Shown one piece after another: positions 592-31,485 of a DNA stretch of 64,000 nucleotides. The notes beneath the pieces were generated by a model. That model searched no databases. It was given only the letters and a program-made list of their open reading frames with translations, and was not told the DNA's origin. The stretch is from Magallana gigas (taxonomy: Eukaryota). The first letter of the stretch is position 1. Every line of letters begins with the position of its first letter. The stretch lies in NCBI RefSeq assembly GCF_963853765.1, contig NC_088859.1, positions 51,522,001-51,586,000 of the forward strand. Direction: 5' to 3'. The position numbers and the translations under genes were made by a program.

Positions 592-3500
592 CTCTACTTC
601 GTGTCGCGGACAGTCCAGCAATAAGAGCGCCGCCTTGATAGTCTGGTGAACGCCATCTGGCGGGTGAACCAACTTCCGGAGTTCGTAGATGGTTCTAATG
701 TCTGCGTTGAGTATCATGTCTTTAAGGTTATTTTTGGCAGCTAAACGGTCCCGTAACCTTGAGGCAAGGGTCAGGGGCTGTTTCATAGAGGGGTCATTGA
801 TAGAGCGTGCCTTCACTATTGCCTTATCTAGTTCCTTCAAGTCTTGATCCTCATACGCTCTGATCAATGCTAAAAAATAAAACCTGCAGTATGACTAAAA
901 CGTATTGCGTCATTCACAATGACGTTATTCACAATCGTTTCTAAACTATTGAAGTAGAGAAGAGTGCCGCAAGTTGACAGAGCTTTTCTGATATATTATA
1001 CATGTAATTCCCTTTAAACTGTGTTATGCTGTCTAATGTTACTTGATTAAGTATTCTACCTTGAGTTCACAATAATGCTGTTATACGTTTAGCATACTTA
1101 TATACTTCGATTAATCAATCCAAAACAAAAACCTTTGTAATTTCTGTTAGAACTATTTCAAAATAAATGTTCAGACAATAATACCGAGCATGGACAGTGC
1201 CCAATGCGATCACAAACTCTGACTATTTTTACGAATCATTACTCATTAGCAAACAAATTATAGAAAACCCTAGACTTTACTGAAACTAAACAATAATGCT
1301 AGAGTAAGATATCAGATATAGATATGCCATTATATTAAATATTGACACACTTACAACACCATTATTATATCCTATTCTATGTATACATGTAATAACGGCA
1401 TTGAAATACATTTCTGTGGTCTAAAATTCAATTTCTAAATACATGTTTAACTAACATTTGTAACCACTACATTTGTATTCATAATACAGCACCTCATAAC
1501 CTTTCAACACATATGACAAAAACCAGCTTTTATGGATGACATAGATAAGACAGGGTTCCTTATAGAACACGTATTACAGAAAACAGCGCTTTACTTTACC
1601 TACATCAATAGGACATAAATATAGTGCGTGTTAACAGAATACAGTGTCGTTGTCCTGGGGACAACCGTCAGTCGTCTTACCTTCCTGGGCCTCGAGTTTC
1701 CGGAGAAGTCGGGATCCCTCCACCAGTAAATCGTCTCCCTGGGAAGGCTTTAGGTACTTATATTCGTTAAGTGCCCTCTTTATCAGAGCAGGCCGCCGGG
1801 AGTTAATGGCCGACTTCAGATTCTGAGAGAGCACGATCCGCTCGCTGGCTGTAAGCAAAGAAATTGATCTTAGCTATTGATTATTCTTAAGCGTTTTTCT
1901 AAATTTGTCTTCGGGTAGGAAAAATAACGGAAACAAGTCGTTATTTAAAAATAAAGAGGTATTTAAAATGAAGGTTTACACTGAGGCAATTAGTCGTCGG
2001 ACGGGTGTTTGCTTTTCAATTTCTGGCACAAGCGTCCATGTGTGTCTTGCTAACTTATGATCTCAGGTAGGTATTTAAAAATGTTAAAAACTTCAGTGGA
2101 GATAAGAAATAAAGAAAGGAGAGTAACCGAGCTGTTTAGATGGCATGTCCCAGATTATTGTATTTTTCATTCTCTGTGCTCGTGAGTTCGTGAAGTAAAA
2201 TAGTATCATTTTTTCTGCTGGCAGAACGCTCTTTTAAATATATATATTTTTTACTTTAACAGGTAAGTAATTCAATGACGACAGCCTACAAATGACTAGA
2301 GGGGATTCTAACGCCTGACCTTTGGGCTGCTCGAGTTGGACCTTCCTGTTGCTTTGTAACTGTTTTTCCGCCTCTGTTACGCTTTTTCCCTCCTTCTTCC
2401 GCTCGTCACGGATTATGCGCAGAACCTCCAGGAAGTCCTGAGTCTCTGTGACGTCATCATCGTTGTCTTCGTCCTCATTCTCCACTTTACGGATGAGGTA
2501 TCTGGCTCGCATTTTCATGAATCCGACATCCTTCTTTTCGTAGATTGTAAAAACGTATTCCCCCACCTCGGGAACTTTGACCCTGTACAGTTCAATATCC
2601 TTCTCTGTGAAGCGCTCCACGGACTTAGACGTGGGTGGTTCATCAGACTTTCTCTTGGCAAGAAAAGCAATCAGATTGTCTATACACCGCGGTACGGGAA
2701 AGATGACCTCGTCGTCTGCAGTTTCAACGGTTTCTGTCGTTATTTCGTTAGAGTCTTTCCAAAAGTTTCTGTTGGTGTTTCCTTTCGATGTATTTGTCTG
2801 GCCCTTTTCTATTGGTCGTCCTGTTGAGTGAATGAGATACGTGAACGCATTATGTAACCGCTGGCTACTGTTTTTCTTGTAGGCGTAAAGGTTAAATGAA
2901 TACTCCCCTTCGATAGGAAGATCTAGAAAATACAACTGATGACTTCTGTCCTCTTTCGTAACCACACGCATGCGCTCTGCTGCAACAGGATTGTTTGTGT
3001 TTAATTCGCATTGCAGCTGAATACCATCTTTAGCTTCAAATTCTAGCTTAGTGTGTCCTTCTTTGGCCTCAAGAAAACTCGCCTGCGTCTGAAATCCACG
3101 CACCCAAATTTTGTAAGCGTTTGGATCCTCACCGAGCTGATCTTGTGAAAAGCAGGGAAAGGGATAGTTCTTGACCCCGCGACCTGTGCACGTGATCAGG
3201 TAATTGTACACGTTAACCATCTCCGTGGCATTTGGTTCCAGAAATCCGTACAGCTTCAGGGCATACTTTCCGGGTTTTGGGAGTCGAGTCTGGATCAGAT
3301 ATTCCCCCGCGTGCCAGTGCATCATCACGTACTTCACAAGATTGACCTCATCTATGATAACACTTTTCATTTTAATCTTTAGTTTCAGTTTGTCACTTCC
3401 CTGCAATCTGATGTCTAGGATTCCATCTTCTGTTGTTATAAACGCTTCCTTGTGTGTAATAGGAATAAGTTTCAGCTTCCTGGAGCGCGCGCATTCTCCC

Positions 3501-13400: not shown

Positions 13401-15421
13401 CCAAACGACCCAGCGCGTGTCTGCTCATTGTAGCAGCATCAAACTTGGTGGAGCCCAAGCAGTGGCTAATTTCTCGGGCTTTGGACGCTGGAAACCGAAT
13501 TTCAACGATACCAGTTTCTGTTTGTATAACGCTTGACTTTGGACTTATGGGAACGATCCCGAGTTCTTCAGCGAGAGGATGTGGCCCCCACCCATGTTCT
13601 GGGACTTCGGGAAATCCTTTAAAGTCTTTGACTGGCACTCCACAGTGGATTAAATATGATAACATGAGATTAAATGGACTGTCTTTAGAATTATCAGTTC
13701 CGTATACGTCCAGCCTGAATCGACCAATGAAAGGAAAGCTTACACCAAATTGTAACGTGGTTTTTGATTTGCTCATCATCACGTATTTGTCAAGGTCACT
13801 GGTATCAGTATTTTCCTCTACGTCTAACTCTGTAACTGAGTACTTGAAATCAAGATTTGATGACTTGTCTCTCGGTAAATCAAAGCTAATCTTACAGGGT
13901 CTTCCATCCGGCCGCAGGATACAGTTGTCGGTGTCGGAAAATCCTTTACTGATGCTGAGACCAAGATGGTGGTAGTGTTCCCGGAAGTACGGTTGCTCCT
14001 GGAATCGTTCCTCTGTGATAGGATTGGCCAAGAGTTGCCATTGCTCCTCGTCCGGAAAATGAGTAAATATGAACTTTTCTGGGTCACACAGGTAAAAGAA
14101 CTCGTTGACCGGGCGGGGTTCTCCCTCCGTGTCCCCCATCTCGGTCGACAGAGTTATCTGCCCGTTTTCATCCACGGTGATTTGGTCCCGGTACTGGGCG
14201 TAGGGGATGGAGGTGTGGGCCCAGAACGGGTCGATCAGGCGCCACTCCCCGTTCACGTATACCGCGTTCCATTTTGACGCTAGTACTTCTTTCCTGATCT
14301 GATCACCCACCTCATAGAAGCCGTGCTTAGAAACGCCATTGATCACGACACACGGAATGTTAGCAGACCTTGTAAAAATAAAAACTCTCATTTACTCTAA
14401 ATTCTACATTAAGATTTGTGAGAATATTTTATAATTAAACAAGTTATGAAATGCTAATTTATCAATCATTTTCTACTCACACACATAAGACATAGAGTAG
14501 ATTGGCATGATCACCGAAGTCCGATTGTATTTTTATTAGGTACTCTAAAGGGCTATTTTCTGGAGGAAGAATTTGGGATATGATGCTCTCTTCGTCAAAT
14601 GACGTCATCCATCTAAATATAGCACGGATTCGAAACAGGTCGTCAATGACTTTAAAGCTTTTGGATACCACCAGGTGATCCGCGATGTCCCAGAAATTCT
14701 CTAATAGAAGCTCTGGTGGTGCCTACAAAACGTATTAAGTGGTTTGTAACGTATTATTGCATTATCATAGAGAATATTGATAGTATGTAGACAAACGGTA
14801 GGTTGAGCGTCAGTGCTGAGTTTTACCTTGAGAGCCGTTTGATCTATAGAAGCAAAGTCCACTCGCTTGAGGAGTTCCTCCTTGGTTATTTTTGGAGGGA
14901 CCACGGGGATATCCGCTCCCTCCCCGAACGTCCCTGAGGCCTGGTCAAGTACGTCATCAGCCTGATAAAACAACATAAACATCAGCAATGTAAACAATGA
15001 ACAAAAGCATTCATCCTTGTATCGAATGCTTATAACTAGCAACTTGGAGCGTGTGAATTTTATCTATCTATTTATTCATATATATATATTAATTTTCATT
15101 TATTTATTTATTTGTTCATTTATGTCTTGGAAGTCATGGATCATGTTTTCAGCCGCTGTTTCAAATATTAAGAAAACGTTTTGAATATTGTAAAAAAAAA
15201 AAGAAAGAAAGAATATCAATCTGATCTTCAGTGTCTTTCAAATTTCAAAACACCGTTTAAAGGAATTTCAGTACATGAGACATATTTTATTATACTTAGG
15301 ACATGGCAATGACTTTTAATATGCTATACGTATTCACAATCTTCGAATAATTTAAAGAAAAAGGCTAAAACTGTTGTTTACGTACCGCGAACACCCTGGG
15401 TCCCTGAGCCTGGTTCCCCAT
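10464..15421 (-). CDS. KY/hillarin-like transglutaminase-like protein with C-terminal dynein-MTBD-like domain, paralog B (~1247 aa)
   Basis: Exons 15386-15421 (MGNQAQGPRVFA), 14827-14961, 14481-14722, 11814-14368, 11514-11681, 11111-11376, 10809-10994, 10464-10619. GT-AG, total 3744 nt, ending in TAG. Motifs: RAIFRWMT, DFGDHANLLYVLC, SKWNAVYVNGEWRLIDPFWA, EIKQYANPPEGVHECIMATLVLLG, DVSKGAAAFYMW. Confidence 0.9.
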
Positions 15422-16965
15422 AGTCTCACTTCAATATAAACAGACTCTTAGGTGTTCCTCTCAGCATCTATCCCACAATGCAGTGCTATCCGCGGGTTTC
15501 CAAGACTGCCGGAGACAATTCTGACGTGACCTATGGGTCCGCTTTATCCCTCTTAATCGTCCTACAGTTAGTTATTGTCCCTATACTGGACAGCAGAGGG
15601 GAGCGAAATGTTTTTGTTGAAGATTACTTTTTTACTTATCCCTCTACATACTTGGAGCTAACGTCCGACACAATGATAAGACGAAGGGCTGAATTTAAAT
15701 AGCTCTCAATTCAAATTAAATTTGTGTTTTTATTTCTACTTTGCGCTTAGCCTTATTATTTGCAAGTGGATGTTTGCTTAAATATTTATGAAGTTAAAGC
15801 AGAGAAATAAGAAAAATGTGTCAAGAGAATATTGTACTATATTTACACCCATTAAGTGTTGTTCTCCACTATTTCTTAAGAATTAAAAAGTGACATGAGT
15901 GCATGAATTCTACACAATCTAGTTTTAACCAGTTTGAAATATACACTTTCAATTGCATTGTTTTACTATTTAAATGTCAATTTTGTTTCAAATACCTATC
16001 ATGGGTTATTATAACATCATTCATTAACAATTCTTTCTTTGTTATTGAATACAATCTGTGAATGTAACATAAATGTATTTTTTTAATTATGTTTATTGTT
16101 TCATATCTGAATAATAATGGATATAGAAATGGTGTAAGTTCAAGTTCATTTATTTCACTTGAATCATAAATTATGTTGCACGAGGTACAGAGAAAATAAT
16201 TACAAAAGGATATAAAATGTAAGGTGCTGTGGTAAAGCAATGTACTATTTGTAAAGTAAAGCAGGATTAAAAAATACAAAATGTACATTCCTAAGTGTTA
16301 AGGTAGGAGAACCGACCAGCTAAAAAAAATTGCTTATTAGTTTACATATATTTTGTATATATACATGTATGGTACATGTATTACTGATATAATTTATAGT
16401 TAATATTTTGATGTAGGTGAAATGAGACTATCTCAGTATGTCTTATAGTCATATTGTAAATTTACAAAGGGTCTCCAAATAAGCACATTTTTGTACAAAT
16501 CAGAAAAACCAATAGTAGGTACAAAACAACATAAGTGAAAATCATATAATTTTTTAATAAAATTAATGCAAAATATCGATACAATTGTAACTGTACTTCA
16601 TACAAGCGACTTATTATTCTGTAATAGCAATGATTATTTTTTTTCTGTGGAGATGATATACAGTATATCATTTACGACGAAGAATTAAAGATGGGCAGGC
16701 TTAAACTGTTTGATTAATTTTGTTCAATACAGTTTGGTTAAGCTACATGAGTACACTTGATCACAATTTCTCAAACAAATTAAGATATTCATCTTTATCA
16801 TCGATTGAGGTTTCCTGGGTACATTAAATCGTAATACGGTTCGAATACGTTATAATACCCCCCCCCCCCCCCCCTCGCCCGCAAAAACAATTAATCCTCG
16901 CACCCCACCCCGGAAAAATCCAGATCCGCGCTTTCATGACGTCATCTCTCAGTGTAAGTATTCTT

Positions 16966-19900
16966 CTAGCGTTTGCCGCTGGGAGGCGCCATACTGGAGG
17001 ATCTAGGCCCGATGTTCCGCGCGGACGTTTTCCCGCTCTTCCGCAGTGAGTTTCTGTAAGACTCCGCTTGTTGAACCATATTGTTAGCCTAAAATATTTC
17101 AAAAGACTTGTGTGTCATACTTGTAACCACTGTTTGAAAGAAAGATAACTCTGAATATTTAAATGACATTGTGGTAAAAAAGCCCATTGAAGATTAATAA
17201 AACGTTCATCTTTGCATGAACTCAAAGATCATTGCTTATACATGTGTAATTGTCTAACGCATTTTTATGTACATAATACTACAGTACGTTACGTTTTTGC
17301 GAATGAAATTATTTCACGAATGTCCTGGGTACATTATTTCACGACTGTGAATTTAAAATATAACAATGTCATATTAGAGATGAAATATGACACGTCATAG
17401 TTCATTTAAACAATAACGCGGGTTATGTAAAAATAATTTCTGCAATGATCGCTACCTTCATAACCCGCATGACTCATCAAAAAAAGCATTTTATTGTTTA
17501 TATTAACATCTGTCTTTTAGCTAATTAATAAATTATTTATGAAACGTAATTAAAATTCACTAAATTACTGTTTATGTACATACACGTTAGCTAAAAGAAA
17601 CAGCGAAATCGTCTCCTGAGAGACTCTGAGCCTGACATCATCATGATTATTTCGTGCAGTCAGTGATATTTCGTAGGTCGCTGTAGGTTTTTATCAATCG
17701 ATAAACGGGGCGTGTCAATTTCAGACCTGACAATTTCTTCTCAGTTTCAGCGCTGACCAATTGATAAACGGGGCGTGTAGATTTCAGTCTGGCTGTTTCA
17801 TAATAAGCTATGAATTAACTATACGTTTTCGTAAGAAATAGAGGGAATAATATTTGGTAGATGTAAATATAACCTAAAAGAAACAGCCAGGATGACAGGA
17901 CAGATATCGACACGCCCTGTTTATCGATTGGTCTAAACTTACAGCGACCTACGAAATATCACGGACTGCACGAAATAATCATGATGGTGTCACACTCAAA
18001 GTCTCATAGGAGACGATTTGGCTTTTTTTTAGCTAACGTACATACGTACATTAAGTGTATTTTAGTGGATTTTACTTACTTTTCATAATCAGAATGTCAA
18101 TTAGAGAGATGTTAATATAAACAATAAAATGCTTTCTTTGATGATTCATTCGGGTTATGAAGGTAGCGATCATTGCAGTCAGAAACTTTTTTAGACAAAT
18201 TTGGACAACCTGCAAACGCGGGTTATGTTTTTTTTCTGCAATGTCGCTACGTTCATATCCCAAATGAACCACCAAAGAAAGCATTTTATTGTTTAAATAA
18301 AACAACAAGAATGAAAATCATAACAATGTATCACCACTTACCCAAGTAAAAAATGCTGCCGCTCCCTTGCTGACATCACGAATTTGCAGATACCTAAAAG
18401 GACTCAAGATTTTCTGCGCAGCTGCAACAATGGTAGGATTGGTGTCTTTGGGATCAAATGCCGCAACACGTCGTAGAATGTTCTGTTTTCCAGTTTTAAA
18501 CAACAAAGCATGACATTTTTTCCAATCCTGTTTAAACATAAATAATCAAAATTATTTGAACGTGCTCGTCAATACAATATCGACAGTTAATTATTCTAGA
18601 GAACTGAATTGGATATTGGGTAATGAATCGGTCACCTTGACAACTGTAGCCCCCTCCCCCAGGAGTAGGAAGGTTGCTCCCAGGGTCTGGTGTACCCCGT
18701 TGGGAGGCTGGGTGTACTTCTTCATCTCTGTGACGGCGTTCTGGTTCATGTCGATGACCGTGGTCTCTATCTTCTTCATCCGGATGTACCTCTCCAGCAG
18801 ACGGTTAGCCAGCAGGATCTGTACCGTCAGCGCCATGTTGTAGTTATACTTGTGGGCACGGTTGATCGCCTCCCGTAGGATATCCGGGTCTTTTGATAAC
18901 GTGGCATTTATCAAATCTGGATAGTTTATCAGTAAGGGTTTTATGAATTGTCATAAAAAACTAATATTTTCATTAAAAAAAAATCACGCAATACTCTTTA
19001 TATATGATAAGAGAAGCTCTTAAAAAACATACACGTAAAATAGAGCCAGATATATCTAGCCTCATTAATGTTTAAGCTTACTGTCTTTGGCTTTCAGCTG
19101 GTTAATGATCCGCCGAGCTTCCTTTAGTAGTTCATCACTCTTTGGAGGCTGTGTTGCTTTGTATTCTCCAAATATGCGCACCAGTTCCTTCAATTTTCTG
19201 TTTCGTATCGCTCTGTTTAACTTACGGACAATCGTACGTCGACGTGCTGTAATCAATTGAAAATATGGTTACATGTATGACTGTTTTGAAGAATCCGAAT
19301 TTACATCATTTATTTGTTTCTATAGGCATAATATAAAATCATAACTGACCAGCACGGTATTTATCTTTGGTATCTTTGTCCATGTTCTTTTCGTCAATGT
19401 CGGGCTTAACTTCGGCCTCAGATTCCATGGTAAGGCGCTCGTCTTCATCATCGCTGTAATCGTCGTCGTTATCATTGTCCACCTGGTCCTCGGCGATGAC
19501 ATGCGCTGCCACTTTCCCGAACGCGGACACGCTTACGCTGTCGTTCCGCGTGGAGTCCTCTCTGTCGCTTTCCTGGACCGTGAAGATGCTCTCTGAGTCT
19601 ACGTCCCCGAGGCTTCTCCCGTCTGAGGAACTAAAGACATCGTCACTTTCCTTCTCTTGGTTGTCGTCTGATTTGGTTGAAATTGAGTCCCTATTCTGCG
19701 TGCCTTCTTTAACAACTACACTGGTAACAGTACCTGCGGCAATTTGGTTTTCAGCTGGAATGCTATCGGCTGAATGACGACCTTCATTTTCCTCTTGTGT
19801 ACTTTTTGGGCGATCATTGCGATTTTCGTCAGTGCTGACATTCTTATATTTTGAACTTTCTTCTTTAAGCTTAGTTGTGGTATGGATAAAAACTACAGTA

Positions 19901-22900
19901 TTAATTTCTGACTCTTCTCGTTTTTCATTGTCGTTTGTATTTATTTTGTCCTCTTCAGCATCACTGCTTGATTCTTTATCATCTTTCTGAGTATGAGAAG
20001 GTGTCTCAACTTCACTATCACCTCTCTTCCTGATTTCACTTTGGCGATCACTTTCTTCGTCGTCTCCTAACACTTTGCTTTGATCTACATCATCGTTTTG
20101 TTGCTGCTCTTCATCATTCTCGTCTATCGCTTCCTCTGCTTGTTGCTGCTCCTCAATATTCTCCTCTATCTCTTCCTCTATTTCTGCTTGAGGTTTCAGA
20201 GATTCTATCAAGGCGTCGATATCATCAGTATAGGAGTCGATAGAAGGCCGGCGGCAGATAGCAAACCTCGCTACAGTGTCCAACACGTTTGATTTATCCT
20301 GAGCCCACACATCCATCACGTACTCACCATCCTCTTTTAAGGTGATGTCGAACGTGTCGGAGTTGACCGCCACGGAGGGTCGCGTACCGTTTTCTCCGTC
20401 TCTGCCGTCGCGGCGACTTATACGTGTGAAGACTTTTTCTGTCACGTCTACACGCGGGATTGGGATTGTGATGGTTTCCTCTGATGTCCTAATAGTTGCT
20501 GTAATAATGTCGTCCTCCTCCTTTGTATCCTCTGCAAACTTCACGCGCTTAACATCACTGACAATGGAAGTTATCATGTAACTTTGAATCTCATAGACAT
20601 TGTTACTGTCCTCGTCTATGGCCGCTAGGACATTCATAGAGTAGTCGCCCGGAACGGGAAGTGTTAAGTCAAATACCCAATGGTTGTCCACATGGGTGCT
20701 CTCTATCTTACCTCTTGCTTGGGCGTCTTTGTTACTTGAAGACAAGTCACACATTAGGACCAATCCCTCGGAGTGTGTTTCAAACTCAACTCGTGCTTTC
20801 CCGCCCCAAGCTTTGACCATTCCGTTTTGATAACTTATGACGTCAATACCAAACTTTTCTGCGTAGGGCTTTGTTCCTACGTTGCCACCAGCAACATTAG
20901 GGAAAGGTTCGTTTATCTTTTCGCCTCCATCGAAATAGAGGAGTAAGTTTATGATGTCCTTTGGAATATAATTCTCTATTTTGTTTCCCCCGTCGTCGGC
21001 GAATATTTTCAATGCATATTCTCCTTCTTTTGGTAATCGAACTTTCACTATATACTTCTCTTTATCTCTTCGCGACAAAATGTACTTGCTTAATAATGCT
21101 TCATTGATTAGCACATTTTTCAAAGAACTAGACAGAAAAGGAATATCTTGTACCTCGAATATAAATTCAATTTCTCCGGTTTTCGTGGTGATTCGTCCAC
21201 AAAGGTTTTCTTTATTTCTTAAACGTATCCCAGCATCCTCTGCGTGAGGTGTTACACCCCACCCTAGGTCGGGGCAATCAGGAAAAGGCAGAATAGAGTC
21301 GCTTTTCCCATCGCACTGAATCAAGTAGGTACAAAGAAGTTTGTAGGATTTGGAATGTTGCACATCAACCGAAAAAATATCAAACTGGAACATTCCAGTG
21401 ACCGGTAGTCTGATTATGAATTTGACTTGTTCCTCTGTGTGCTCAAAGAAAACAAAGCGTTCGAGAAGTAAATCTACAGGCTTTTCCTCGCCATTTATCA
21501 CTTCCATTTTCATCTGACTAAGGTTGTAGGCGAACTTGTAGAATCTTCCTTCTGACATTGGTAACGTAAACACAATATTGACCGGATCCCCATCTGTGTA
21601 GAGAATACAGTTTTTACAGTTATTTCCAATCTCCATGTCCAGTATGTGGAGCTGTTCTCTAACATAAGCCCTCTCTTGAAATTCCTTCTCTGTAATCGTA
21701 GACTTCACCAGCTGCCATGCAGGCTCGTCCGGAAGATGGGTCCACAACAACTGTTCCGGATCGACCAGGAAATAGAAGTCATTGAATGGCACGGGGCCCT
21801 CGCCGTCCTCCATCACTCGCTTTAGACGGTTCTTCTTTGTGAGTTCCACTCTGTCTATTGAGTTCCTCTCATCAACACACACGGATGCCCAGAAACAGTC
21901 CACAATTCTCCACTCTCCTTCCACATACACGGCGTTCCACTGAGAGGCCATACTCGTTCTATCCACTTCTCCACCAAGCTCGTACATGGCGCTCTTCGTC
22001 ATCCCGTTGATGATAACACATGGTATGTCCGCTAGTCTATAACAGAAAGGGGAAAATTAATTATCTAACATTCGTTTGATTAATGCATAACAACACTAAT
22101 AAAATACCAAACGCGTTCTGTAAATTATTAATTAATGTTACATCAAATAAAGTTAACTGTTTCGTGTTTAGGTATAAAAATCACATGTGCTTGTTTCATA
22201 TAGCTAGTACGCTCAATCAGCAAATACAATAACATTCTTAATGTTTGTAGTAAATTAATTAAAATGGACATGGGCATCTTAATTTGCTAAATAGTTCTGT
22301 ATTAACTTAGCAGAATGGGAGAGAAATATGGAAGAGGAATACTCAACGCACGAGCACATGGTGTAGAAGAGGTGGGCGTGGTCGCCGATCTCGCACTGAA
22401 TCTTCAGGAAGTATTCCAGCGGGGATCCGTCGGGCGGTAGTACGTCGGTGTCGATGTTCATTATGTCATACGACACTATCCAGCGGAAGATGGCGCGAAC
22501 TTTGAACAGATCATTGACGACCTGTCCGTCCGGCGTCACAATCATGTACTCCACTACATCCCAGAAATCCTCCACCAGAAGGTCGGCGGGAACCTAGGGT
22601 GTGTACAGACACAGATAATCTACATGTAGGTATCATAAGCAGTGGAGATCACATACACAGGTAATGAAGGTATCATAAGCAGTGTGGACCAAACACACAG
22701 GTAATGTAGGTATCATAAGCAGTGGTGACCACATACACAGGTAATATAGGTATCATAAGCAGCGTGGACCACACACAGATGATGTAGGTATCATAAGCAG
22801 TGTTAACCACTGTGACAGACACAGATAATATAGAAATAATAAGCTGTGTTCCAGCAATAGACATGCAATGCATATTTTTGCAAGCAGTAAACAGACAATA

Positions 22901-23352
22901 TATACAGGTTTGTAAGATTTAAAACATTATTGTTTATGGTTCAAATATTTGTTAATTTTTTAACAACTAGCGGCATTTCTCTCAATAACCCACCTGCAGC
23001 GCAATATCATCGATAAACTTTAGGTCGACGTCCTTAAGGAGTTCTTTTTTTGAAGTAAGAGGCGGATGTGGACTGGGCTTCCCTTTCTTACCCACAGTTC
23101 CACGGTGGATTGGCGCGGCTTTCTTTGAATTCTGTGTTTAAAATAATTAGATTTATTTTAGCAAATTTCAAAAGTGTTTATAATTGTTACAGAAATAGCA
23201 AAATATCAAATAGTCCATGTGTTGTTAACGTAAAACAATATATATCCAGCTACTCATGAACAAAATGTAAATGAACCCTTAACAGTAATTCTTACCTTAT
23301 CCTGACTTGCTGATGTGTCAACAGATGGCGCTTTAGATGCCCCTGACCCCAT
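16966..23352 (-). CDS. KY/hillarin-like transglutaminase-like protein with C-terminal dynein-MTBD-like domain, paralog C (~1292 aa)
   Basis: Exons 23296-23352 (MGSGASKAPSVDTSASQDK), 22994-23131, 22352-22593, 19350-22036, 19082-19246, 18636-18916, 18342-18527, 16966-17088. GT-AG, total 3879 nt, ending in TAG. Motifs: RAIFRWIV, EIGDHAHLFYTMC, SQWNAVYVEGEWRIVDCFWA, EMKKYTQPPNGVHQTLGATFLLLGE, DWKK, DVSKGAAAFFTW. Confidence 0.9.
17405..18300. mobile_element. ~900-bp non-autonomous element with ~300-bp inverted arms and a terminal hairpin, in the last intron of paralog C
   Basis: 17410-17720 is the reverse complement of ~17900-18185. 18120-18300 folds back on itself (aaacaataaaatgctttctttg...caaagaaagcattttattgttt). 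Confidence 0.8.
22612..22830. repeat. Intronic minisatellite, ~39-40-bp unit x5
   Basis: Core aggtatcataagcag recurs at ~22628, 22668, 22708, 22748 and 22786 with related intervening sequence, in the gene C intron 22594-22993. Confidence 0.9.
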
Positions 23353-24259
23353 TATTGTCCCTCGTCATCACACAGCAACACAGAAGCGGTTCTTGACTGA
23401 CAATTCCAGTGTTTTCTGTTTCTCTGTTATGTGTGTAAAACTTGACCGTTTGACCTACATTTAACATTTTCATAATCCCTTATTATTCGATTACTGGGTC
23501 GCGAATCAAAAGGATTAGAATTATTAAATAGGTGTCGATTTCAGAGTGTAATCCGCAATGATTTAGCTGCCCTCGTCTAGTCAGTATGTAAAGGTATGTA
23601 AGGCAAAACTGTCCCCTTTGTCAGATATTGGATTGTTAACCAGGGTATGTTTATTGTGTTTTGATGTCATAAATATGTCAATCCACATTAATTTAAAGTT
23701 TTCTTAATGGCTTCGCACCATTGGTTATTAAAATTCCTCAATACATTAAAAAGTTTTGCTGAAAATTTTGAATTCTGGAAATTAATTTACCCCAGGGGGG
23801 AATCATTTTAACTTTAACATTAACTGTTAAGAGGTATCTTCCAAGTTCCCCATATACCATAAAGTTGAGGTGTTGAGGATCTCAAGTTCAATAATCAAAA
23901 GAGTTGCTTTTACAAAATATAACATCTAGGTATTTAAAGTTCTTAACATTTTCTTATTGGGAACCTTAAAAAGTAAAACAGTTGGTTTGATTACCTCTAC
24001 CAAATATTACAACTTTAGTTTTTTTACTAATAACCCTAAGACACTCTTTACAATATCTTTCCAATATCTTTACAATATCTAGAAAAAAAAGCATTGAGTA
24101 AGTGTTGAAAATCTTCTGGATTGTTTGACAATAAGGTGGTATCATCTGCATCTGCATACAATAAGACAAAAAGATATAAACAAAGATTAAGATTTTTCCT
24201 TATGTTCTCAGACAGGCGTGGCAAACCTCTGACATTGTTTATATACAGATACTCCTTAA

Positions 24260-24750
24260 AGGGGCATGGTCACGATTCTGGTCAAAGATTAATTTTCTGA
24301 TTTTAATATTTACAATGCTTCAGAAAGGCATTTTTGTAATAGGCAACCGAAATTTGAGTGTCGTTTGTTAAGTTATAAGCGAGTTACAGAGCTTGAAATT
24401 CTTCGCTATGTAAACAAAGCGTTTGTTTATATTTTGAACGTTGGAGTAAAAAGTTCAGTTTTAAACCTAAAACGAATGTGTTGAACGTTAAGAACTGTTT
24501 ATCTATGCTTAAAATAAATAAAAAGAAAAATAAGCTAAAAATATTTTTACTGGTGTATTGAACTTAGTATGTGAACAAAAACAGGGCACGAGCCTTGTTT
24601 ATATGACAAAGAATTGTGAGCCGTGTATCTTGCTTATAACTCTACGAATGACTCTCAAGTTTTATTTGGACATTAAAAATTCATTTCTAAAGCATTGTAA
24701 ATAATAAAAACATAAAAATAAAATTTGACCAAAATCGTGACCATGCCCCT
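24260..24750. mobile_element. MITE with 27-bp TIRs, TTAA-flanked (Kolobok-like, inference)
   Basis: TIRs aggggcatggtcacgattctggtcaaa / tttgaccaaaatcgtgaccatgcccct. ttaa on the left, tcac on the right. A second partial copy at ~54245-54522 ends cccct-ttaa. Confidence 0.75.
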
Positions 24751-25424
24751 TCACGATCATTCAAATATAAATTTTCCCCTTGTCTTACTCCTACTGTACA
24801 TTCGAAAAATTCAGAACTTAATCCATTGACCAAAACTTTAGACGTAATACCTTTGTACATATAAGTGATAACTTTAAAACATTTTCAATCAATATTCTTC
24901 GATATTACCTTGTGCCAATATGCCGAACAGAGTCAAATGCTTTCTCACAATCTATAAAAGCACAATATAATTTCATCTTATGCAATTTGAAGAGTTCGAT
25001 AAGAGAATACAATAAAAAATATGATCTATAGTACTATGTCCTCTACGAAAACCTGATTGGTTCTCTAAAAGGAGTTGGACATTATCAGCATATTTGTTTA
25101 ACCTTTCATTAATGATAGCAGTGAATAATTTTCTAAAACAACTCAGAAGAGTAATTGTTCTTTAATTTTGGGGTTCTGTACTATCCCCTTTATTCTTATA
25201 AACAGGTATAATGTTACCACTAACCCATTGTGGGTATCACACCAGATTCAAATATTTAAATATTTCTTCACGAGTTATTGATTGATTATAATGAGAAGAA
25301 GTAGAATGAAAACTAACTACTAAACTGTGATATCTGGTCAGGAAAATTCTTGATGTGTCCATGCAGGTGCCTTGCTCGTTGTCTTAATTTTACTTAAATG
25401 AAAGACATATGATAAAAAAAAAAT

Positions 25425-25488
25425 CATATTGTACACTTTACATATACTAGTTTCTATCATATTGTACACTTTACATATACTAGTTTCT
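25425..25488. repeat. Local tandem duplication, ~33 bp x2
   Basis: atcatattgtacactttacatatactagtttct occurs twice consecutively. Confidence 0.85.
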
Positions 25489-26726
25489 TGATAGTGCATG
25501 TTCTGTATAGTCCTTTTGCGACGTGTTATTGGCCTTGCTTATCCCATATTGATAATTCTGTAATCGAGTGTCATTTCTAGTATATAAAAAAGTTCAGAAT
25601 AAAATCTTGGAATTCGCCAACAATAAATTTAATAAAAACTCAAGCAGGTACGCGCGTTACTTTACTCCGTTGAAATTAATATGAAATAAAAAAAACCATA
25701 ATTAAATCAGGAGACGAAGTTTTAAATTAGTATATTTGTTGTTTACTGTTCCATTATGAGATTTTTACATGCATTGCCTTTTAAACCAAAATTTTAATTT
25801 TTCTAAAAGAGGCCGATTAGAGAGGACTCACATTTTCTCTTTTTAAATTACAAAATTTGAGAAGAATGTTTGACTGTTCATCCATATATATAAGTTTTAT
25901 CTGAGGTGTAGAGAACTCTACTAAAGAAGAATTAAAGTATATAAAGCTAGGTCCACAAGGAGTACATCATTAATGGGGTACTTGGATGAACAGAGTACAT
26001 GTAAAGACGACCAGGCACATGTAGTCCTGACAGCTAGGGAGTATTAAAGCAATCGTGTTGCCATCGCTTTCACAGGTCAATGATCACTTCAACTATATCA
26101 AAGCCTAAGCATGGTGCTGCTATTGTTTGGCATGTTTAGACTTTGCATATTAAAAGTGGGACTTCATACAGACTATTTAATTAGTAATGGTATGATACAT
26201 GTAAGTCGACATCATGTTGTGTCTTTGTCATTTTTTAAGGATTAAATTTTTCTTCGTTGTGTTTACAAACTCTAAATAGCGGGAAAATTGTCAAAAGATT
26301 TAATTTGTATTAATCAACGAACAATTATTAAAAAAAATATTTGAATTTGCTGAATTGCGACCGTTTAATTACTTGCTTACTTTGATGAATAACGTTTATT
26401 TAAAGACAAGCATAAAAGCATAGGATAATATTTTTTGTATCATAAGTACTGATACAATATATACAAGATAACCATTTGAACTGGTTTATCATCTTCCAAA
26501 ATGTGCAGATGCTAGCCTGTGACATATATTCACGAGAACAAATTACTTTTATATACCATTCAAAAATAATTTACATGACATACATGTATGTGCAGGAATA
26601 CAAAATATTTTCATCCTATCTTTATATACATGTACATGTATATTGTAAATGTCTTTATATCTTTGTCTTTTATATCTTCGCGCATTCAGTTCGCAATTGA
26701 TTTTAGTGCTATTTGGATTTGTTTGG

Positions 26727-29700
26727 TCAAGAGTTGCGGGACTTGACGGTGTAAGTTCTGTTGATGGTATCCTGGGTGTTGTATCTAGGGAGTTTGTCCG
26801 GTAGCTGGGGTAAATGTGACCTACTGGTCCGGGCCGACGCCGGACCCCGTGAGATTGTTTGTTCTACATTTCGGACATCTTCGGTCACTTTCATCCACTC
26901 GTCCATTGGACGACTAGCGCCCCCTGTCTGTTCTACTTCGTGTATCATTCCCGACGCCTTGGTAAAAAAGTAAAAAACCAATAAAAAACTTAAATATAAA
27001 ACCGAAAAAACAGTAACACTAGAAAAATGCACTTGTATCGTCTCTTCGTTCACTATTCAGGGCATTGTTGCGCCCGATTTTCTTTTTAAAACATTCAATT
27101 AATGCATCTATAAAAGATCTTTAAAATTTGCAGACTGAATTACCCAGTTGTAAAAAGCTGCCGCGCCATTGCTAACATCCCGAATTTCCTCCAGCGTGAA
27201 AGGAGAAATGATTCTCTTGGCCTCTAGAGCCACATCCAGGAAGCAATACTTAGGGTCAAACATGGAAACCTTCCGCATAATAGACTCTTTTCCTGATCTT
27301 GAGAGAATCGTCTGACATGTCTTCCAATCCTAAATTTCAGATTCATGATAAAGTCAATGCTACTTGTATGATGAAAAAGTGCATCCAATCATCGACAAAA
27401 GAGAATACATGAGATTGTGTACAAATACCTTAACGTCCTTTCTAGGATATTCTAACAGAACCAAGACGGCCATGATTGATTGACGAACGCCCTCTGGCGG
27501 ATGTGTGTAGGTTCTCAGCTCGGCTGCAGTTGATTGGTCCATGACGAGGATATTGTGACGTAACTTTTCTATCCTGGCAAGTTTGTCACGCAGGCGCTCA
27601 GCTGTCACGATCTGAAGGTTAAGAATTCCGTCATAATTTGCCTCTTTAGCCTCACGAATGGCACGTTTCAGTTTTTCAAGATGGCGAGTTCGGGAAGCGG
27701 CTGCAAGTTCTAAGAATAGAAAATTAAAACATAGCAAATGATGTCGTACAGTAGTGTAGAGCAAATTAAAGAAAATAAAGATATTGTTTATCATTAAAAG
27801 AGTCCTTACGGTCTTTAGCGTTGAGAAGGTGCAACAGTTTCCTGGCGGATGTCAGCGTCGGGTCATTCTCGGCCGGCTTTGTTTCTTCGTAAGCAATGAC
27901 AAGCTGCTCTAATGCATCTCGATCCCCCAGTTCCATGGCGCGGCGTTTCAACATCAAAATGTGACGTCGTTTTCTCACCATGTCTAAAGTAGCTCCAGTT
28001 TTCTTTCTGTCCATTGTTTCCGATTTTGTTTCTGATTTGTCTTCATCCTCCTCTACCTCTTCCTTGATTCGGTCCATTATCACCATTGGGTCGTCTTGCA
28101 TGAGCTCTGTTGTTGTTTTACGGTTGAGTTGGTAACGGGCTATACAATTTAAGAGTCCGAACTCGTCCTTGTCGTAAAGGTTCATCATGTACTCGCCGTA
28201 ATCGTTGAGCTCCGCCAGGAACAGCTTGTCGCTGTCGTGATCGATGATCTCAATCTGAGAACTGTCCGGGGGATCGTTTGCGTGGAGACGCTGAAGACAG
28301 CAGACGACATCCAGGTAACCACGTGGTATGGGAACCAAAGCCTCGTTATCGGCTGTTTGAATGGTCTCTGTTAAAACTCTGGTCGGTTTAAACTCTTCCT
28401 TGGTGTCTCTATAAGCGTGTCCGTCTGAGAAAACGAGATATGAATGGACATTGTACACTCGACTGCGTTTTGGATTTTCCCGCGCAAAAACGTTTATGGA
28501 GTATTCTCCCTTGACAGGTAAGTCTATGTCAAACGCCCATCTATCTTCGATGGTCTGACGGTAGGACTTCAGGTACTTCATCGCCTCGGGGTCTGTCGTA
28601 TGAATCTCAACCATTAGTTCTACATAACTCATTGCTGCAAATTCCAGACGAATTCGACCATCTTTCGTTTTAAACCGACCCTTTTGGATTCTTGCATTGA
28701 CTCCAATGTTTTCAGCTATGGCCTTTTTCCCAAGCATGCCATCGGGGACGTTGGGGAAAGGTTTATTCTGAATATCATCATTTGAGCAGCTAATGAGGTA
28801 GTTTAATATATTATCCGCATCACCTGGGAGTCCTTCTTCATTAGCGTATATCTTCAGAGCATACTCCCCACCTTGTGGAAGTCTGATGTGGATGAAATGT
28901 TCTCCATTTTCCTCCCGTACAAGAATATATTTACTGAGTGTGGCTTCATCTAAAGTGATACTCTTTAGAAGCTGATGTATCTCCATTTTTTTGTTGGTTC
29001 CTAGTTTAATGTCAATTTTGCCGTCTTCAGTCACAATTACGGCACTATTATGGCTTATTGGCACTACCCCCGAATCCTTCGTCTCCTGAACTGGCCCCCA
29101 ACCAATGGCCGGCTGGTCAGGCAAGGGGAGGCAATCCTTCTTTGGGACCGTGCAGTGAATCATATGAGAACATATCAGATCGAATGATTCGTGTATCTTT
29201 TCATCCTTTCCATAAACATCTAATTTAAATTTACCTGACAATGGGAATCTCATTGACAGCCTCAACAGACCGTTTGTTTGTTCAAGCAGAACAAACCGAT
29301 CCAATCTTAGATGATGTCGGAACTCTTCGTCCGATTTATTTCTGTACATTGCGTACCGGAACTGTAGGTCTTCCGTCTTTTCCTCTGGAAACCCAAACCG
29401 TAACTCGAGTTCCCCTTCTTCCGGTATAATAATCTCTTTGAACTGGAACTCGTCAAACAAGTTGATGTTCATGGAGTAAAAGCGTTCCCGGAGATAGACG
29501 TGCTCCTCAAACTCCGTGACCGAGATCGTGCTCTCCAGACACTGCCACTCATCCTCGTCAGGGTAGTGGGTCCAGATGAACTTTTGAGGGTCCGTCAGGA
29601 AATAGAACTCATTGACCTCGTTTTCGACATGCTGGTAGGCACCATCATCATCTTCATCTTCATCAACGTAGTTTCCGTCAGCGTCCACTAATTTCCACTC

Positions 29701-31485
29701 CTTGGACTTCTTTCCAACGACGCATGCTGACGCCCAGAATGCGTCAATAAAGCGCCACTCTCCCTTTAGAAAGACGGCGTTCCACTGAGCTCCCATGTTC
29801 TCCCGGTTCACTTTGCCTCCGACTTCATAGGCGGCGCTTTTAGTCATTCCATTAATAATAACACAAGGGACGCCTAGCATGCTGTAATAAACGAATATAA
29901 AGGAAATGGGAAACTTTATGACATAGATATTGATGTTAATTTTTAAAATTCAAAAGTAAACTGCCATATATTTACAATGCCAAAGCGTAAGTGCATTTAC
30001 ATGTTATTCAAATCTAAAACTTGCAGCAGGTTACTGGATATGAAATCATCCTGAAAATCGGCTGACCCATAAACTTAAAAGTACAGTTTAGTTTTTAAAT
30101 AGTCGATATCACATGTTATGAATGTAAAAATAAAGACGATTCGTCAATTAATATTACTTCATAGTTTTACCACCAACAAACGATGCTCACTTGCAGAGAC
30201 CCCATATTAGGTGCGCGTATCCACCCTGGCTGGTCTGCATTTTGATGAAAAACTCGAGGGGGGAATTTGGGGGTGGCTCATCAGCGGCCTTCAAGTTATA
30301 GATATCTTGATGCACGACCCACAGAAAAATGGCGCGAGTCAGTGCCATATCGTTCCAGTAGTCACGGAATTTAAAAAAGTTGATGACGTCATCAAAGGTT
30401 CCAACCAGCAGCTTGGATGGTGCCTGTGTGATAAAAACGGCATAAATAGTAAAATATCGTGATTGATTATTTTTTTATATGAATTGAATTAAAAGGTAGC
30501 ATATAATGAAATTTTAATTAAAATTCCTTGATAGGCTTCCATATCAAGGAACATGAAAGTAACATATAACAAAATTATTGCAGGGTTCCTGAACCAGTCA
30601 ACCAAGTGAATCAATTTGAACCAAGTTTAAAACTCTAATGAGCGGTCCAAATTAAAGGGCTGAATGACCATTAAAATTTTTAAACTATATTGATCTTTGG
30701 AGCACATCTCTGTATAATAATACATGTACAGGAAATCATCAAATTTCTTTGCTAAAATTTATGAGTTTTTAAGTACTAAATAATAGAAAACTGTTGATAT
30801 TTTTTAAAATCATATTTGAAATTTATAATAGGATTTGTTGATCACCAAGCTTCCTCAAGTCTTAATCACTGTTAAACCGATGTTAAGAATCTGATGAAAC
30901 AATAGAGGTTACCTGTAGAATGTAACTATCGATGTCCTTGTACATCGGCATCTTGAAGAACTCGTCTTTGGTCGTGATGAGGCTGCTGGGTCGGGGCAAG
31001 TCCTGCTTCTGCTCGGGGATCTCCCCATTGAGCGTCGGGATGTGTTGCTTTAAAAACAAAACACATAAAAGGATACAATGTACATATAAAACCCAACCAG
31101 TGCTCTATATTGTGACGTACTTTCTTTGAACTTTGCCATCCATAAACTTATTACTTTGTATATTCTCTTTTCACCATTCTGTTGTCTAACAGGTTTAACC
31201 GTCACTGAAGTTCGCCACAACTAGGACAAACATTTTTCCCTTTTTCAGAGTTTTTTGAAAAGTACATTTGGTCAAATACTTAAGAATTTGAAAATTTAAA
31301 ATCTGTGATTGCATTTTGATTATAATATTTCATTCATACTGATGGATTAAAAACAACAAAAAGATTGAGAGGCTCGGGGTTATTTGACGGACAAAGAGCG
31401 TGTTATATAGCCCTGTATGATGGCTGGCGGTTACCTTGTCAAACTCGCTGATGGCGTGCAGATTCTTACTCTGGTTTATCCCCAT
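26727..31485 (-). CDS. KY/hillarin-like transglutaminase-like protein with C-terminal dynein-MTBD-like domain, paralog D (~1062 aa)
   Basis: Exons 31435-31485 (MGINQSKNLHAISEFDK), 30913-31047, 30191-30423, 27810-29881, 27429-27709, 27144-27329, 26727-26957. GT-AG, total 3189 nt. Motifs: RAIFLWVV, SQGGYAHLIWGLC, AQWNAVFLKGEWRFIDAFWA, ELRTYTHPPEGVRQSIMAVLVLL, DWKT, DVSNGAAAFYNW. Confidence 0.9.

What the first reader, a model, noticed from the sequence alone, without database searches (positions are those of the whole stretch)
592..31485. Tandem four-gene family: predicted lipid-anchored pseudo-transglutaminase scaffolds ending in a dynein-like microtubule-binding domain
Seen in sequence: four minus-strand paralogs with conserved exon phases share one architecture. 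It runs short N-terminal exon, transglutaminase-like core, four LP-x-x-G-x-Y beta modules, low-complexity linker, helical hairpins, then a ~120-aa terminal domain. Established: the core resembles the KY/hillarin/LTD-1/Cyk3 family, whose members act as cytoskeletal scaffolds (Z-disc, septin, cytokinesis). Inference: an N-terminal Gly2 lipid anchor, a dead enzyme fold and a dynein-stalk-type MTBD without any motor domain would make a motor-less membrane-to-microtubule tether, possibly ciliary, flagellar or cytokinetic. I do not know of this combination being described.
Basis: partly seen in the sequence, partly recalled or inferred. Interest (0 to 1): 0.85.

Follow-up and report, generated by a model that had tools for sequence, protein, structure and literature searches.

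The report
Motor-less dynein microtubule-binding domain on KY-like scaffolds
An oyster gene cluster encodes proteins that join a probable lipid anchor, a catalytically dead transglutaminase-like scaffold and a true relative of dynein's microtubule-binding tip, and no paper in the searched library describes this combination, which recurs across marine invertebrates.

Summary
Four minus-strand paralogs lie in 592-31485. A fifth lies just outside the window, so this is a five-gene tandem array.

- **Transcript support:** Spliced transcript contigs from two studies join all seven exons of gene D at GT..AG introns. They link the MGINQSK start, the transglutaminase-like core and the terminal exons.
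- **Core:** It matches Transglut_core and Ig-like_KY, and it folds like Hillarin, LTD-1, KY and Cyk3. The catalytic Cys and His are missing in all five paralogs and in every relative that carries the terminal domain.
- **Terminal domain:** It is homologous to the dynein stalk tip and microtubule-binding domain (MTBD). The family profile hits only dynein heavy chains among solved structures (E 2.8e-9). The predicted fold aligns to dynein MTBD structures at Z 9.8-13.9.
- **Spread:** The oyster genome has about 17 loci with the domain. A 1.8-billion-protein library holds 1,708 matches, none of dynein size among the best 150. They come from molluscs, brachiopods, annelids, amphioxus and tunicates. 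Many start with an N-acylation motif or have a transmembrane segment before the domain.

Literature searches found no description. Microtubule binding, lipidation and location are untested. A membrane-to-microtubule tether is the best-supported inference, not a result.

The parts
26601..31585 (-). Gene D, a complete transcript of seven exons: 31435-31585 (ATG at 31485, MGINQSK), 30913-31047, 30191-30423, 27810-29881, 27429-27709, 27144-27329, and 26730-26957 plus the 3' UTR.
   Evidence: Spliced contigs of runs X1 and X5 join all exons at GT..AG introns. The same junctions were predicted independently. The ORF from exon 3 to the stop is 1000 aa without a stop codon.
29430..30423 (-). Gene D transglutaminase-like core (exon 3 plus the start of exon 4). 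The catalytic Cys is replaced by Gln, the His by Ala/Gln, and the Asp is kept.
   Evidence: PF01841 on the orthologs at E 1.5e-7. Triad alignment against vertebrate KY-like references.
28110..29517 (-). Gene D: four Ig-like_KY beta-sandwich modules, each with an [LF]P-x-x-G-x-[YF] motif.
   Evidence: PF23265 at E 1.1e-54, three stretches, best at aa 122-254 of the exon. The ortholog model shows four beta-sandwiches.
26946..27709 (-). Gene D coiled-coil stub plus dynein-type MTBD, spread over exons 5-7. The core is 104 aa.
   Evidence: The domain keeps 27 of the 29 positions that are at least 90% conserved in the family.
16969..23352 (-). Gene C. Predicted start MGSGASK at 23352; exon 2 ends at 22994; further exons are 22352-22593, 19350-22036 (with a long acidic low-complexity insert), 19082-19246, 18636-18916, 18342-18527 and 16969-17088.
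   Evidence: About 96-100% identical to the C. gigas protein LOC105338050 (P0065) over exons 3-8. Its C-terminus hits PF12777 at E 1.4e-5, 24.8 bits against a cut-off of 24.
10467..15063 (-). Gene B, the most divergent copy. Exon 2 lies within 14827-15063; further exons are 14481-14722, 11814-14368, 11514-11681, 11111-11376, 10809-10994 and 10467-10619. The start codon is unresolved.
   Evidence: 1190 aa, no stop. MTBD changes include the conserved W to F and R to L; 24 of 29 conserved positions are kept.
1..5072 (-). Gene A, cut by the window edge. Exon 2 ends at 4959; further exons are 4546-4781, about 2320-4328, 1681 to about 1848, 592-869, and the first 3 nt of exon 7. The rest of the MTBD and a 293-aa Pro/Lys-rich tail lie at window 3..-1180.

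Best explanation
**What is shown**
The window holds four of five tandem paralogs of one family. The family is ancient, spread across invertebrate bilaterians, and strongly expanded in this oyster. Each protein has these parts in order:
1. an N-terminal Met-Gly-x-x-x-Ser signal
2. a KY/hillarin-type transglutaminase-like core that has lost the catalytic Cys and His
3. four KY-type Ig-like modules
4. a variable low-complexity linker
5. helical hairpins
6. a short antiparallel coiled-coil stub carrying a 104-residue domain homologous to the dynein heavy-chain microtubule-binding domain (MTBD)
7. a mostly basic tail

There is no AAA+ motor.

**What is inferred**
- The N-terminal Gly is myristoylated and places the protein on a membrane.
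- The dead transglutaminase fold and the Ig modules act as a protein-binding scaffold, as described for Cyk3, KY and Hillarin.
- The MTBD, fixed in one coiled-coil register, binds the tubulin lattice statically.
- The protein therefore tethers a membrane or cortical complex to microtubules without moving along them.

The tandem copies differ in linker, tail and MTBD charge. They may bind with different strength or have drifted to other partners.
For: **Architecture and transcript**
-.

**MTBD homology**
- Pfam PF12777 matches the gene C product at E 1.4e-5 and the Gigantopelta ortholog at 1.9e-9.
- A profile of 23 C-termini against all PDB sequences matches dynein heavy chains almost exclusively, best E 2.8e-9. 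The hits include isolated 130-164-aa MTBD constructs at E 3e-7 to 2e-6.
- The AlphaFold model has pLDDT 84.8.
- Foldseek top hits are dynein stalk/MTBD entries; 6kjo gives TM 0.70 and rmsd 2.5 A.
- VIA-align gives Z 13.9 to 3err and 5ayh. Twelve dynein MTBD entries score Z 9.8-13.9, and unrelated helical proteins score 7.5 or less.
- The core is 104 aa with no insertions or deletions in all five paralogs and five orthologs.

**Pseudoenzyme**
-.

**Membrane theme**
- MGINQSK is on the transcript. MGSGASK and MGSGASQ are predicted for genes C and E.
- G2 and S6 are at least 90% conserved in the orthologs.
- Among 104 full-length representatives carrying the domain, 35 start with the N-myristoylation pattern (20 of them also have a Cys at positions 3-6). 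A further 13 have a hydrophobic segment, always N-terminal to the MTBD.
- These include proteins with CLCA/VWA or CD20-like domains.

**Charge**
- Canonical orthologs and gene C have a net basic MTBD core (+2 to +9) and mostly basic tails.
Against: - No experiment of any kind bears on lipidation, microtubule binding or location.
- The MTBD cores of genes D, B, A and E have net charge +1, +1, -1 and -3. They keep only 20-27 of the 29 conserved family positions, and gene B has lost the conserved Trp.
- Residues that contact tubulin in dynein were not mapped.
- The coiled-coil stub is only about 20-25 residues per strand, so dynein's register-based control of affinity cannot apply. Which register is fixed is unknown.
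- A single myristate without a nearby Cys or basic patch, as in genes C and D, gives only weak membrane affinity (established knowledge).
- Fifty-six of the 104 representatives show neither an acylation motif nor a hydrophobic segment.
- Two poly-A/cDNA RNA runs gave zero reads on gene D, so expression may be restricted.
- The start codons of genes A and B are unresolved.
Confidence: 0.5

Rival explanations
1. The terminal domain keeps the dynein MTBD fold but no longer binds tubulin. It serves as a helical docking module for another partner, for example septins or another cortical filament as reported for Hillarin. The proteins would then be membrane-associated scaffolds with no link to microtubules.
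For: - Sequence identity to dynein MTBDs is only 13-21%.
- The MTBD cores of several paralogs are near neutral or acidic.
- Drosophila hillarin is reported to concentrate at the cleavage furrow and to interact genetically with a septin (PMC3718969, citing Ji et al. 2005).
- One non-dynein chain, 7jtk_C of radial spoke 1, also aligns at Z 11.2.
Against: - The positions conserved across the family coincide with the dynein MTBD core motifs: E-x-K/R-x-Y-x-x-PP-x-GV, W, F-D-P-K and S-x-G-A-A-x-F-x-x-W.
- The canonical orthologs keep a basic core and a basic tail.
- Characterised hillarin, LTD-1, KY and Cyk3 end before this domain. Lingula hillarin lacks it.
Confidence: 0.25
2. In this array only some copies are functional tethers. 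Genes A, B and E are relaxed or neofunctionalised duplicates, typical of lineage-specific expansions in oysters, whose MTBD is decaying.
For: - Genes A and E keep 20 of 29 conserved MTBD positions and gene B keeps 24. Gene B has W to F and R to L changes, and its CC1 region is non-helical in sequence character.
- The best genomic match to the family profile is the single-copy locus at C7:34.396 Mb (E 5.6e-42), not this array.
- The start codons of genes A and B were not found.
Against: - All five copies keep intact reading frames of 1000-1256 aa from exon 3 to the stop.
- All keep the same exon phases and a gap-free 104-aa MTBD.
Confidence: 0.15
3. The transglutaminase-like core is still an enzyme with a non-canonical active site, as in the vasohibins. 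The MTBD would deliver it to tubulin as a substrate.
For: - Vasohibins are transglutaminase-like cysteine proteases with a Cys-His-Ser triad (PMC4866520). They show tubulin tyrosine carboxypeptidase activity (PMC7543661).
- Genes C and E have a Cys two residues upstream of the catalytic column.
Against: - No Cys and no His sits at the catalytic columns in any of the 33 MTBD-bearing sequences.
- The upstream Cys is absent from genes A, B and D and from the canonical orthologs.
Confidence: 0.04

Closest known systems
KY / Hillarin / LTD-1 / Cyk3 transglutaminase-like scaffold family
   Same: - Transglut_core plus Ig-like_KY domains.
- The predicted structure aligns best to Drosophila Hillarin (E 1.7e-35), C. 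elegans LTD-1, mouse and human KY, and S. pombe and S. cerevisiae Cyk3.
- The loss of active-site residues matches Cyk3 (PMC3386208).
   Different: - All those proteins align only to residues up to about 657 of the model, and none reaches the helical/MTBD part.
- Vertebrate KY-like proteins keep the Cys-His-Asp triad and lack the MTBD. Lingula hillarin also lacks the MTBD.
- No LIM or SH3 domain appears here.
- Four Ig-like modules and an N-terminal acylation motif are present.
Dynein heavy chain stalk tip and microtubule-binding domain (Pfam PF12777; PDB 3ERR, 5AYH, 6RZB, 6RZA, 6KJO)
   Same: - Same six-helix globular fold on an antiparallel coiled coil.
- Profile E 2.8e-9, Z up to 13.9, TM 0.70 to the isolated MTBD.
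- Shared core sequence motifs.
   Different: - No AAA+ ring, linker or tail; the proteins are about 1000-1250 aa rather than about 4,500.
- The coiled coil is a stub of about 20-25 residues per strand.
- The domain is C-terminal and followed by a basic tail.
- Microtubule binding is untested.
Other motor-less proteins with the same MTBD-like domain (uncharacterised)
   Same: The same domain was found at E down to 1e-85 in several protein types:
- short MGCGxS proteins of molluscs
- CLCA/VWA proteins of amphioxus
- a CD20-like membrane protein (source organism not looked up)
- KY-CARD proteins of amphioxus
- tunicate proteins
   Different: They have different N-terminal modules. None has a published function that I could find.

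Membership tests
KY/hillarin/LTD-1/Cyk3 transglutaminase-like family | Transglutaminase-like core (Pfam PF01841) | tested here: met
   E 1.5e-7 (32.1 bits, cut-off 23) on the Ostrea ortholog and 1.6e-7 on the gene C product.
KY/hillarin/LTD-1/Cyk3 transglutaminase-like family | KY-type Ig-like domains (Pfam PF23265) after the core | tested here: met
   E 1e-43 to 1e-54 with three stretches in each of the four large exons. The model shows four beta-sandwiches.
KY/hillarin/LTD-1/Cyk3 transglutaminase-like family | Overall fold closest to characterised members | tested here: met
   The top six AlphaFold DB Swiss-Prot hits are Hillarin, LTD-1, KY (mouse and human) and Cyk3 (two yeasts).
KY 'peptidase' (active transglutaminase-like enzymes) | Cys-His-Asp catalytic triad | tested here: not met
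   Triad columns read QAD, ISD, FSD, FAD and IAD in genes D, C, B, A and E, against CHD in three vertebrate KY-like references. None of the 33 MTBD-bearing sequences has Cys or His there.
Hillarin / LTD-1 proper | N-terminal LIM domains | tested here: not met
   No LIM hit in Pfam scans of the exons or the orthologs.
Dynein heavy chain MTBD (PF12777 region) | Sequence-profile match to the stalk-tip/MTBD region | tested here: met
   PF12777 scores over its cut-off for the gene C product (24.8 bits against 24) and for P0048 (37.5), and below it for P0006 (17.2). The family profile against PDB gives E 2.8e-9, almost exclusively dynein hits.
Dynein heavy chain MTBD (PF12777 region) | Six-helix MTBD fold at the tip of an antiparallel coiled coil | tested here: met
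   pLDDT 84.8. Z 9.8-13.9 to twelve dynein MTBD entries. TM 0.65-0.70 to isolated MTBDs. The coiled coil is short.
Dynein heavy chain (whole protein) | AAA+ motor ring and linker | tested here: not met
   No AAA or DHC Pfam hit. The proteins are 1000-1256 aa.
Dynein heavy chain MTBD (PF12777 region) | Binds the alpha/beta-tubulin interface of microtubules | not testable with these tools
   A complex prediction was not run because no full-length tubulin could be given by reference; the tubulin genes are split into exons.
N-myristoylated proteins | Met-Gly start fitting G-{EDRKHPFYW}-x(2)-[STAGCN]-{P} | tested here: met
   Gene D MGINQSK is on the transcript and preceded by an in-frame stop. Gene C MGSGASK and gene E MGSGASQ are predicted. 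G2 and S6 are at least 90% conserved in 23 orthologs. Genes A and B are inconclusive.
N-myristoylated proteins | Covalent myristate on Gly2 | not testable with these tools
   This needs metabolic labelling or mass spectrometry.

The most novel reading that the evidence does not exclude
Dynein's microtubule-binding domain is not exclusive to dynein. A large and so far undescribed family of motor-less proteins in marine invertebrates carries it at the C-terminus, behind an N-acyl or transmembrane anchor. The family includes lophotrochozoans, amphioxus and tunicates, and the KY-like pseudo-transglutaminases are its largest branch. These proteins would form a general class of static tethers between membranes and microtubules.
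Probability: 0.4. Interest if true: 0.85.

Novelty: new variant of a known kind. Interest (0 to 1): 0.68.

Why it matters
To my knowledge the dynein MTBD is treated as a part peculiar to the dynein motor. Here it appears as a stand-alone cassette, fixed on a short coiled coil, in hundreds of invertebrate proteins that also carry membrane anchors.

If it binds microtubules, three things follow:
- It would define a new class of membrane-microtubule linkers.
- It would give a natural, register-locked MTBD for structural work.
- It would give the first functional handle on the large KY-like gene expansions of molluscs.

It would also show that the KY/hillarin scaffold family, known from the muscle Z-disc, the cleavage furrow and the axon hillock, has a branch wired to microtubules. 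Every claim is directly testable with a small recombinant fragment.

Tried and rejected
**Searches and tests that led nowhere**
- I tried to learn whether leech Hillarin itself carries the domain. The search with Owenia P0163 returned only itself. The search with Helobdella P0197 did not retrieve the Hirudo protein. Lingula 'hillarin', fish KY and amphibian KY-like proteins have no MTBD. The Helobdella KY-like protein P0197 (start MGCGSS) does have it.
- Raw-read RNA runs X19 and X21 gave zero reads on gene D. This is no test of expression.
- I did not run a complex prediction with tubulin. Tubulin genes in this genome are split into exons, so no unaltered full-length alpha and beta chains could be referenced.
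- I did not map dynein's tubulin-contact residues. The paper I read gave too few residue details.
- A literature search for the PDB code 7JTK did not identify chain C.

**Explanations rejected**
- Gene-model chimera: single contigs span all exons.
- Active enzyme.

**Weak lead only**
- Two larval proteome papers list a 'kyphoscoliosis peptidase' that falls together with radial-spoke and cilia proteins at metamorphosis (PMC7525975, PMC5908917). With at least 30 KY-like loci in the genome, I could not tell which gene that is.
Full report
**Setting**

The window is a 64-kb stretch of a bivalve chromosome, G000:C7:51522001-51586000. The product of gene C is about 96-100% identical to the Crassostrea gigas protein LOC105338050. 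There are no N runs.

**Observation**

Four long minus-strand ORFs each match Pfam Ig-like_KY at E 1e-43 to 1e-54. I mapped splice junctions with orthologous proteins as guides.

Genes B, C and D give uninterrupted reading frames from exon 3 to the stop: 1190, 1227 and 1000 aa. Gene A is cut by the window edge. Exons 7 and 8 lie at window 3..-182 and -290..-1180.

A fifth paralog, gene E, lies further on at -4453..-11691. The array therefore has five genes. Exon 3 has length 2 mod 3 in all five, and the middle exon of the terminal domain is 186 nt in all five.

**Transcript evidence**

Contigs from runs X1 and X5 (different studies and organism labels) lie on gene D as single spliced molecules of 3397 and 3316 nt. 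They skip six introns, all with CT..AC ends on the + strand, at the predicted junctions.

They join the first exon (ATG at 31485, MGINQSKNLHAISEFDK, preceded by an in-frame stop) to the transglutaminase-like exons and to the three terminal exons. Two raw-read RNA runs gave no reads, which is uninformative.

**The core**

Orthologs and the gene C product match Transglut_core at E 1.5e-7. An AlphaFold model of the 1057-aa Ostrea ortholog has mean pLDDT 77.6. It shows these parts:
- a disordered N-terminus
- an alpha/beta core at residues 60-300
- four beta-sandwiches at 319-768
- a low-confidence linker
- helical hairpins at 771-884
- a long helix at 891-915
- a compact helical domain at 919-1006
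- a return helix at 1008-1027
- a disordered basic tail

Against reviewed AlphaFold DB entries, the six best matches are Drosophila Hillarin, C. elegans LTD-1, mouse and human KY, and the two yeast Cyk3 proteins. All of them cover only model residues up to about 657.

I aligned the sequences with vertebrate KY-like proteins, which have Cys-His-Asp with the 42- and 15-residue spacing of the KY triad as I recall it. The five paralogs read QAD, ISD, FSD, FAD and IAD at those columns. None of the 33 relatives that carry the terminal domain has the Cys or the His. The fold is a pseudoenzyme, like Cyk3 (PMC3386208).

**The terminal domain**

Several independent lines place it with the dynein MTBD:
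- **Pfam.** PF12777 ("Microtubule-binding stalk of dynein motor") matches the gene C product at E 1.4e-5, just over the gathering score. It matches the Gigantopelta ortholog at 1.9e-9, in both cases on profile positions 85-215, the stalk tip.
- **Profile against solved structures.** A profile of 23 C-termini matches dynein heavy chains almost exclusively, best E 2.8e-9. The hits include isolated MTBD constructs.
- **Predicted fold.** The AlphaFold model of the gene C C-terminus has pLDDT 84.8.
- **Foldseek.** It ranks dynein stalk/MTBD entries first; TM is 0.70 and rmsd 2.5 A to 6kjo.
- **VIA-align.** Z is 13.9 to 3err and 5ayh. Twelve dynein MTBD entries score Z 9.8-13.9, with a drop to 7.5 or less for unrelated helical proteins.

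The 104-residue core has no insertion or deletion in any paralog or ortholog examined. There is no AAA+ domain.

**Extent of the family**

The oyster genome holds about 17 loci with this domain. About 15 of them lie next to Ig-like_KY hits. These include a second five-gene array on C6 and a single-copy locus at C7:34.396 Mb that fits the family profile best.

In a library of 1.84 billion representative proteins, the profile finds 1,708 proteins at E 0.001 or better and 665 at 1e-10 or better. None of the best 150 is of dynein size. Of the 149 new ones among them, 49 have the KY region.

Names show which animals carry the KY-plus-MTBD architecture:
- bivalves, gastropods and a cephalopod
- the brachiopod Lingula
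- the annelids Owenia, Helobdella and Paralvinella
- amphioxus

Other carriers of the same domain are:
- short MGCGxS proteins of molluscs
- CLCA/VWA proteins of amphioxus
- a CD20-like membrane protein (source organism not looked up)
- KY-CARD proteins of amphioxus
- tunicate proteins

Vertebrate KY, amphibian KY-like proteins and Lingula hillarin lack the domain.

**Membrane link**

Gly2 and Ser6 are conserved in at least 90% of 23 orthologs. Of 104 full-length representatives, 35 begin with the N-myristoylation pattern, and 20 of those also have a Cys at positions 3-6. A further 13 have a hydrophobic segment, always before the MTBD. From general knowledge the background for such N-termini is about one percent. 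The recurrent pairing of a membrane anchor with this domain is the strongest comparative argument for the tether model.

**Mechanism and its limits**

Shown: the architecture, the transcript, the homologies and the dead active site.

Inferred: myristoylation, scaffold function of the core, static microtubule binding by a register-locked MTBD helped by a basic tail, and hence a membrane-to-microtubule tether.

Against:
- There is no experiment.
- The MTBD cores of genes D, B, A and E are near neutral or acidic (+1, +1, -1, -3), against +2 to +9 in canonical orthologs and +8 in gene C.
- Genes A and E keep only 20 of the 29 conserved positions. Gene B has lost the conserved Trp.
- A lone myristate is a weak anchor.
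- Tubulin-contact residues were not mapped.

Rivals are a repurposed domain that binds another partner, partial decay of some array copies, and a non-canonical enzyme. I consider the last unlikely.

**Novelty**

Full-text searches combining KY with dynein or microtubule-binding terms, and searches for MTBD-like domains outside dynein, found nothing relevant. Databases already tag a few members automatically with PF12777. The domain is therefore visible in databases but not described in the papers searched.

I rate this a new variant of known kinds: the KY-like scaffold and the dynein MTBD in a new combination. The wider motor-less MTBD family is the more novel reading.

Noticed in passing
G000:C7:51510309-51517548 (window -11691..-4453; loci L031, L032): A fifth paralog, gene E, lies outside the window on the same strand. 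Its predicted start is MGSGASQ, it has an intact 1094-aa frame from exon 3, and the same exon phases. The array is a five-gene array.
   Followed up: yes
G000:C6:5796867-5830061 (+ strand), plus single loci at C7:34.396 Mb, C6:55.94 Mb, C6:23.17 Mb, C3:5.845 Mb and C3:28.84 Mb: There is a second five-gene tandem array of KY-plus-MTBD genes, and several single copies. The C3:28.84 Mb copy has in-frame stops and may be a pseudogene. Two loci with the MTBD-like domain (C7:5.972 Mb and C6:8.303 Mb) have no Ig-like_KY hit nearby.
   Followed up: partly
proteins P0088, P0093, P0108, P0109, P0111, P0134, P0141, P0171 (molluscs): These are short proteins (266-481 aa) that start with MGCGxS or a close variant, a dual-acylation type motif. 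They consist of little more than a linker and the MTBD-like domain. Lottia P0093 hits PF12777 at E 1.6e-5.
   Followed up: partly
proteins P0098, P0099, P0115 (amphioxus) and P0137: The same MTBD-like domain sits at the C-terminus of three further protein types: CLCA/VWA proteins after a hydrophobic segment, a CD20-like membrane protein, and a KY-Ig protein with a CARD domain.
   Followed up: partly
PDB 7jtk chain C, residues 438-595: One non-dynein solved chain, from Chlamydomonas radial spoke 1, aligns to the model at Z 11.2 over 150 residues with 11% identity. I could not identify the protein or decide whether this is homology or a common helical arrangement.
   Followed up: partly
window 19350-20300 (gene C), 12000-12900 (gene B), window -290..-1180 (gene A tail): The paralogs differ mainly in low-complexity inserts. 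Gene C has a long acidic Asp/Glu/Ser-rich linker, gene B a Ser/Lys/Thr-rich linker, and gene A a 293-aa Pro/Lys-rich basic tail (net +25) after the MTBD.
   Followed up: partly
window 24900-25170, minus strand: Between genes C and D lie ORF fragments that look to me like a reverse transcriptase remnant of a retroelement (for example '...NQSGFRRGHSTIDHIF...' and '...YCAFIDCEKAFDSVRH...'). This was not tested.
   Followed up: no
window 38402-39439, 47297-48361, 59023-60033 (all minus); fragment 32968-33423: There are three intronless ORFs of 336-354 aa that look like seven-pass receptors (GPCR-like). A truncated near-duplicate of the first lies just upstream of gene D. No domain search was run on them.
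   Followed up: no
window 50882-52879, minus strand: An intronless 665-aa ORF has an N-terminal Cys/His pattern that looks like a RING plus B-box, followed by a beta-propeller-like tail. By eye it is TRIM/NHL-like. This was not tested.
   Followed up: no
window 27709-27812: The contig of run X5 (another organism label) places the exon 4/5 junction two bases away and has two extra letters (GA). The length is unchanged, so this looks like two substitutions next to the splice site rather than alternative splicing.
   Followed up: no
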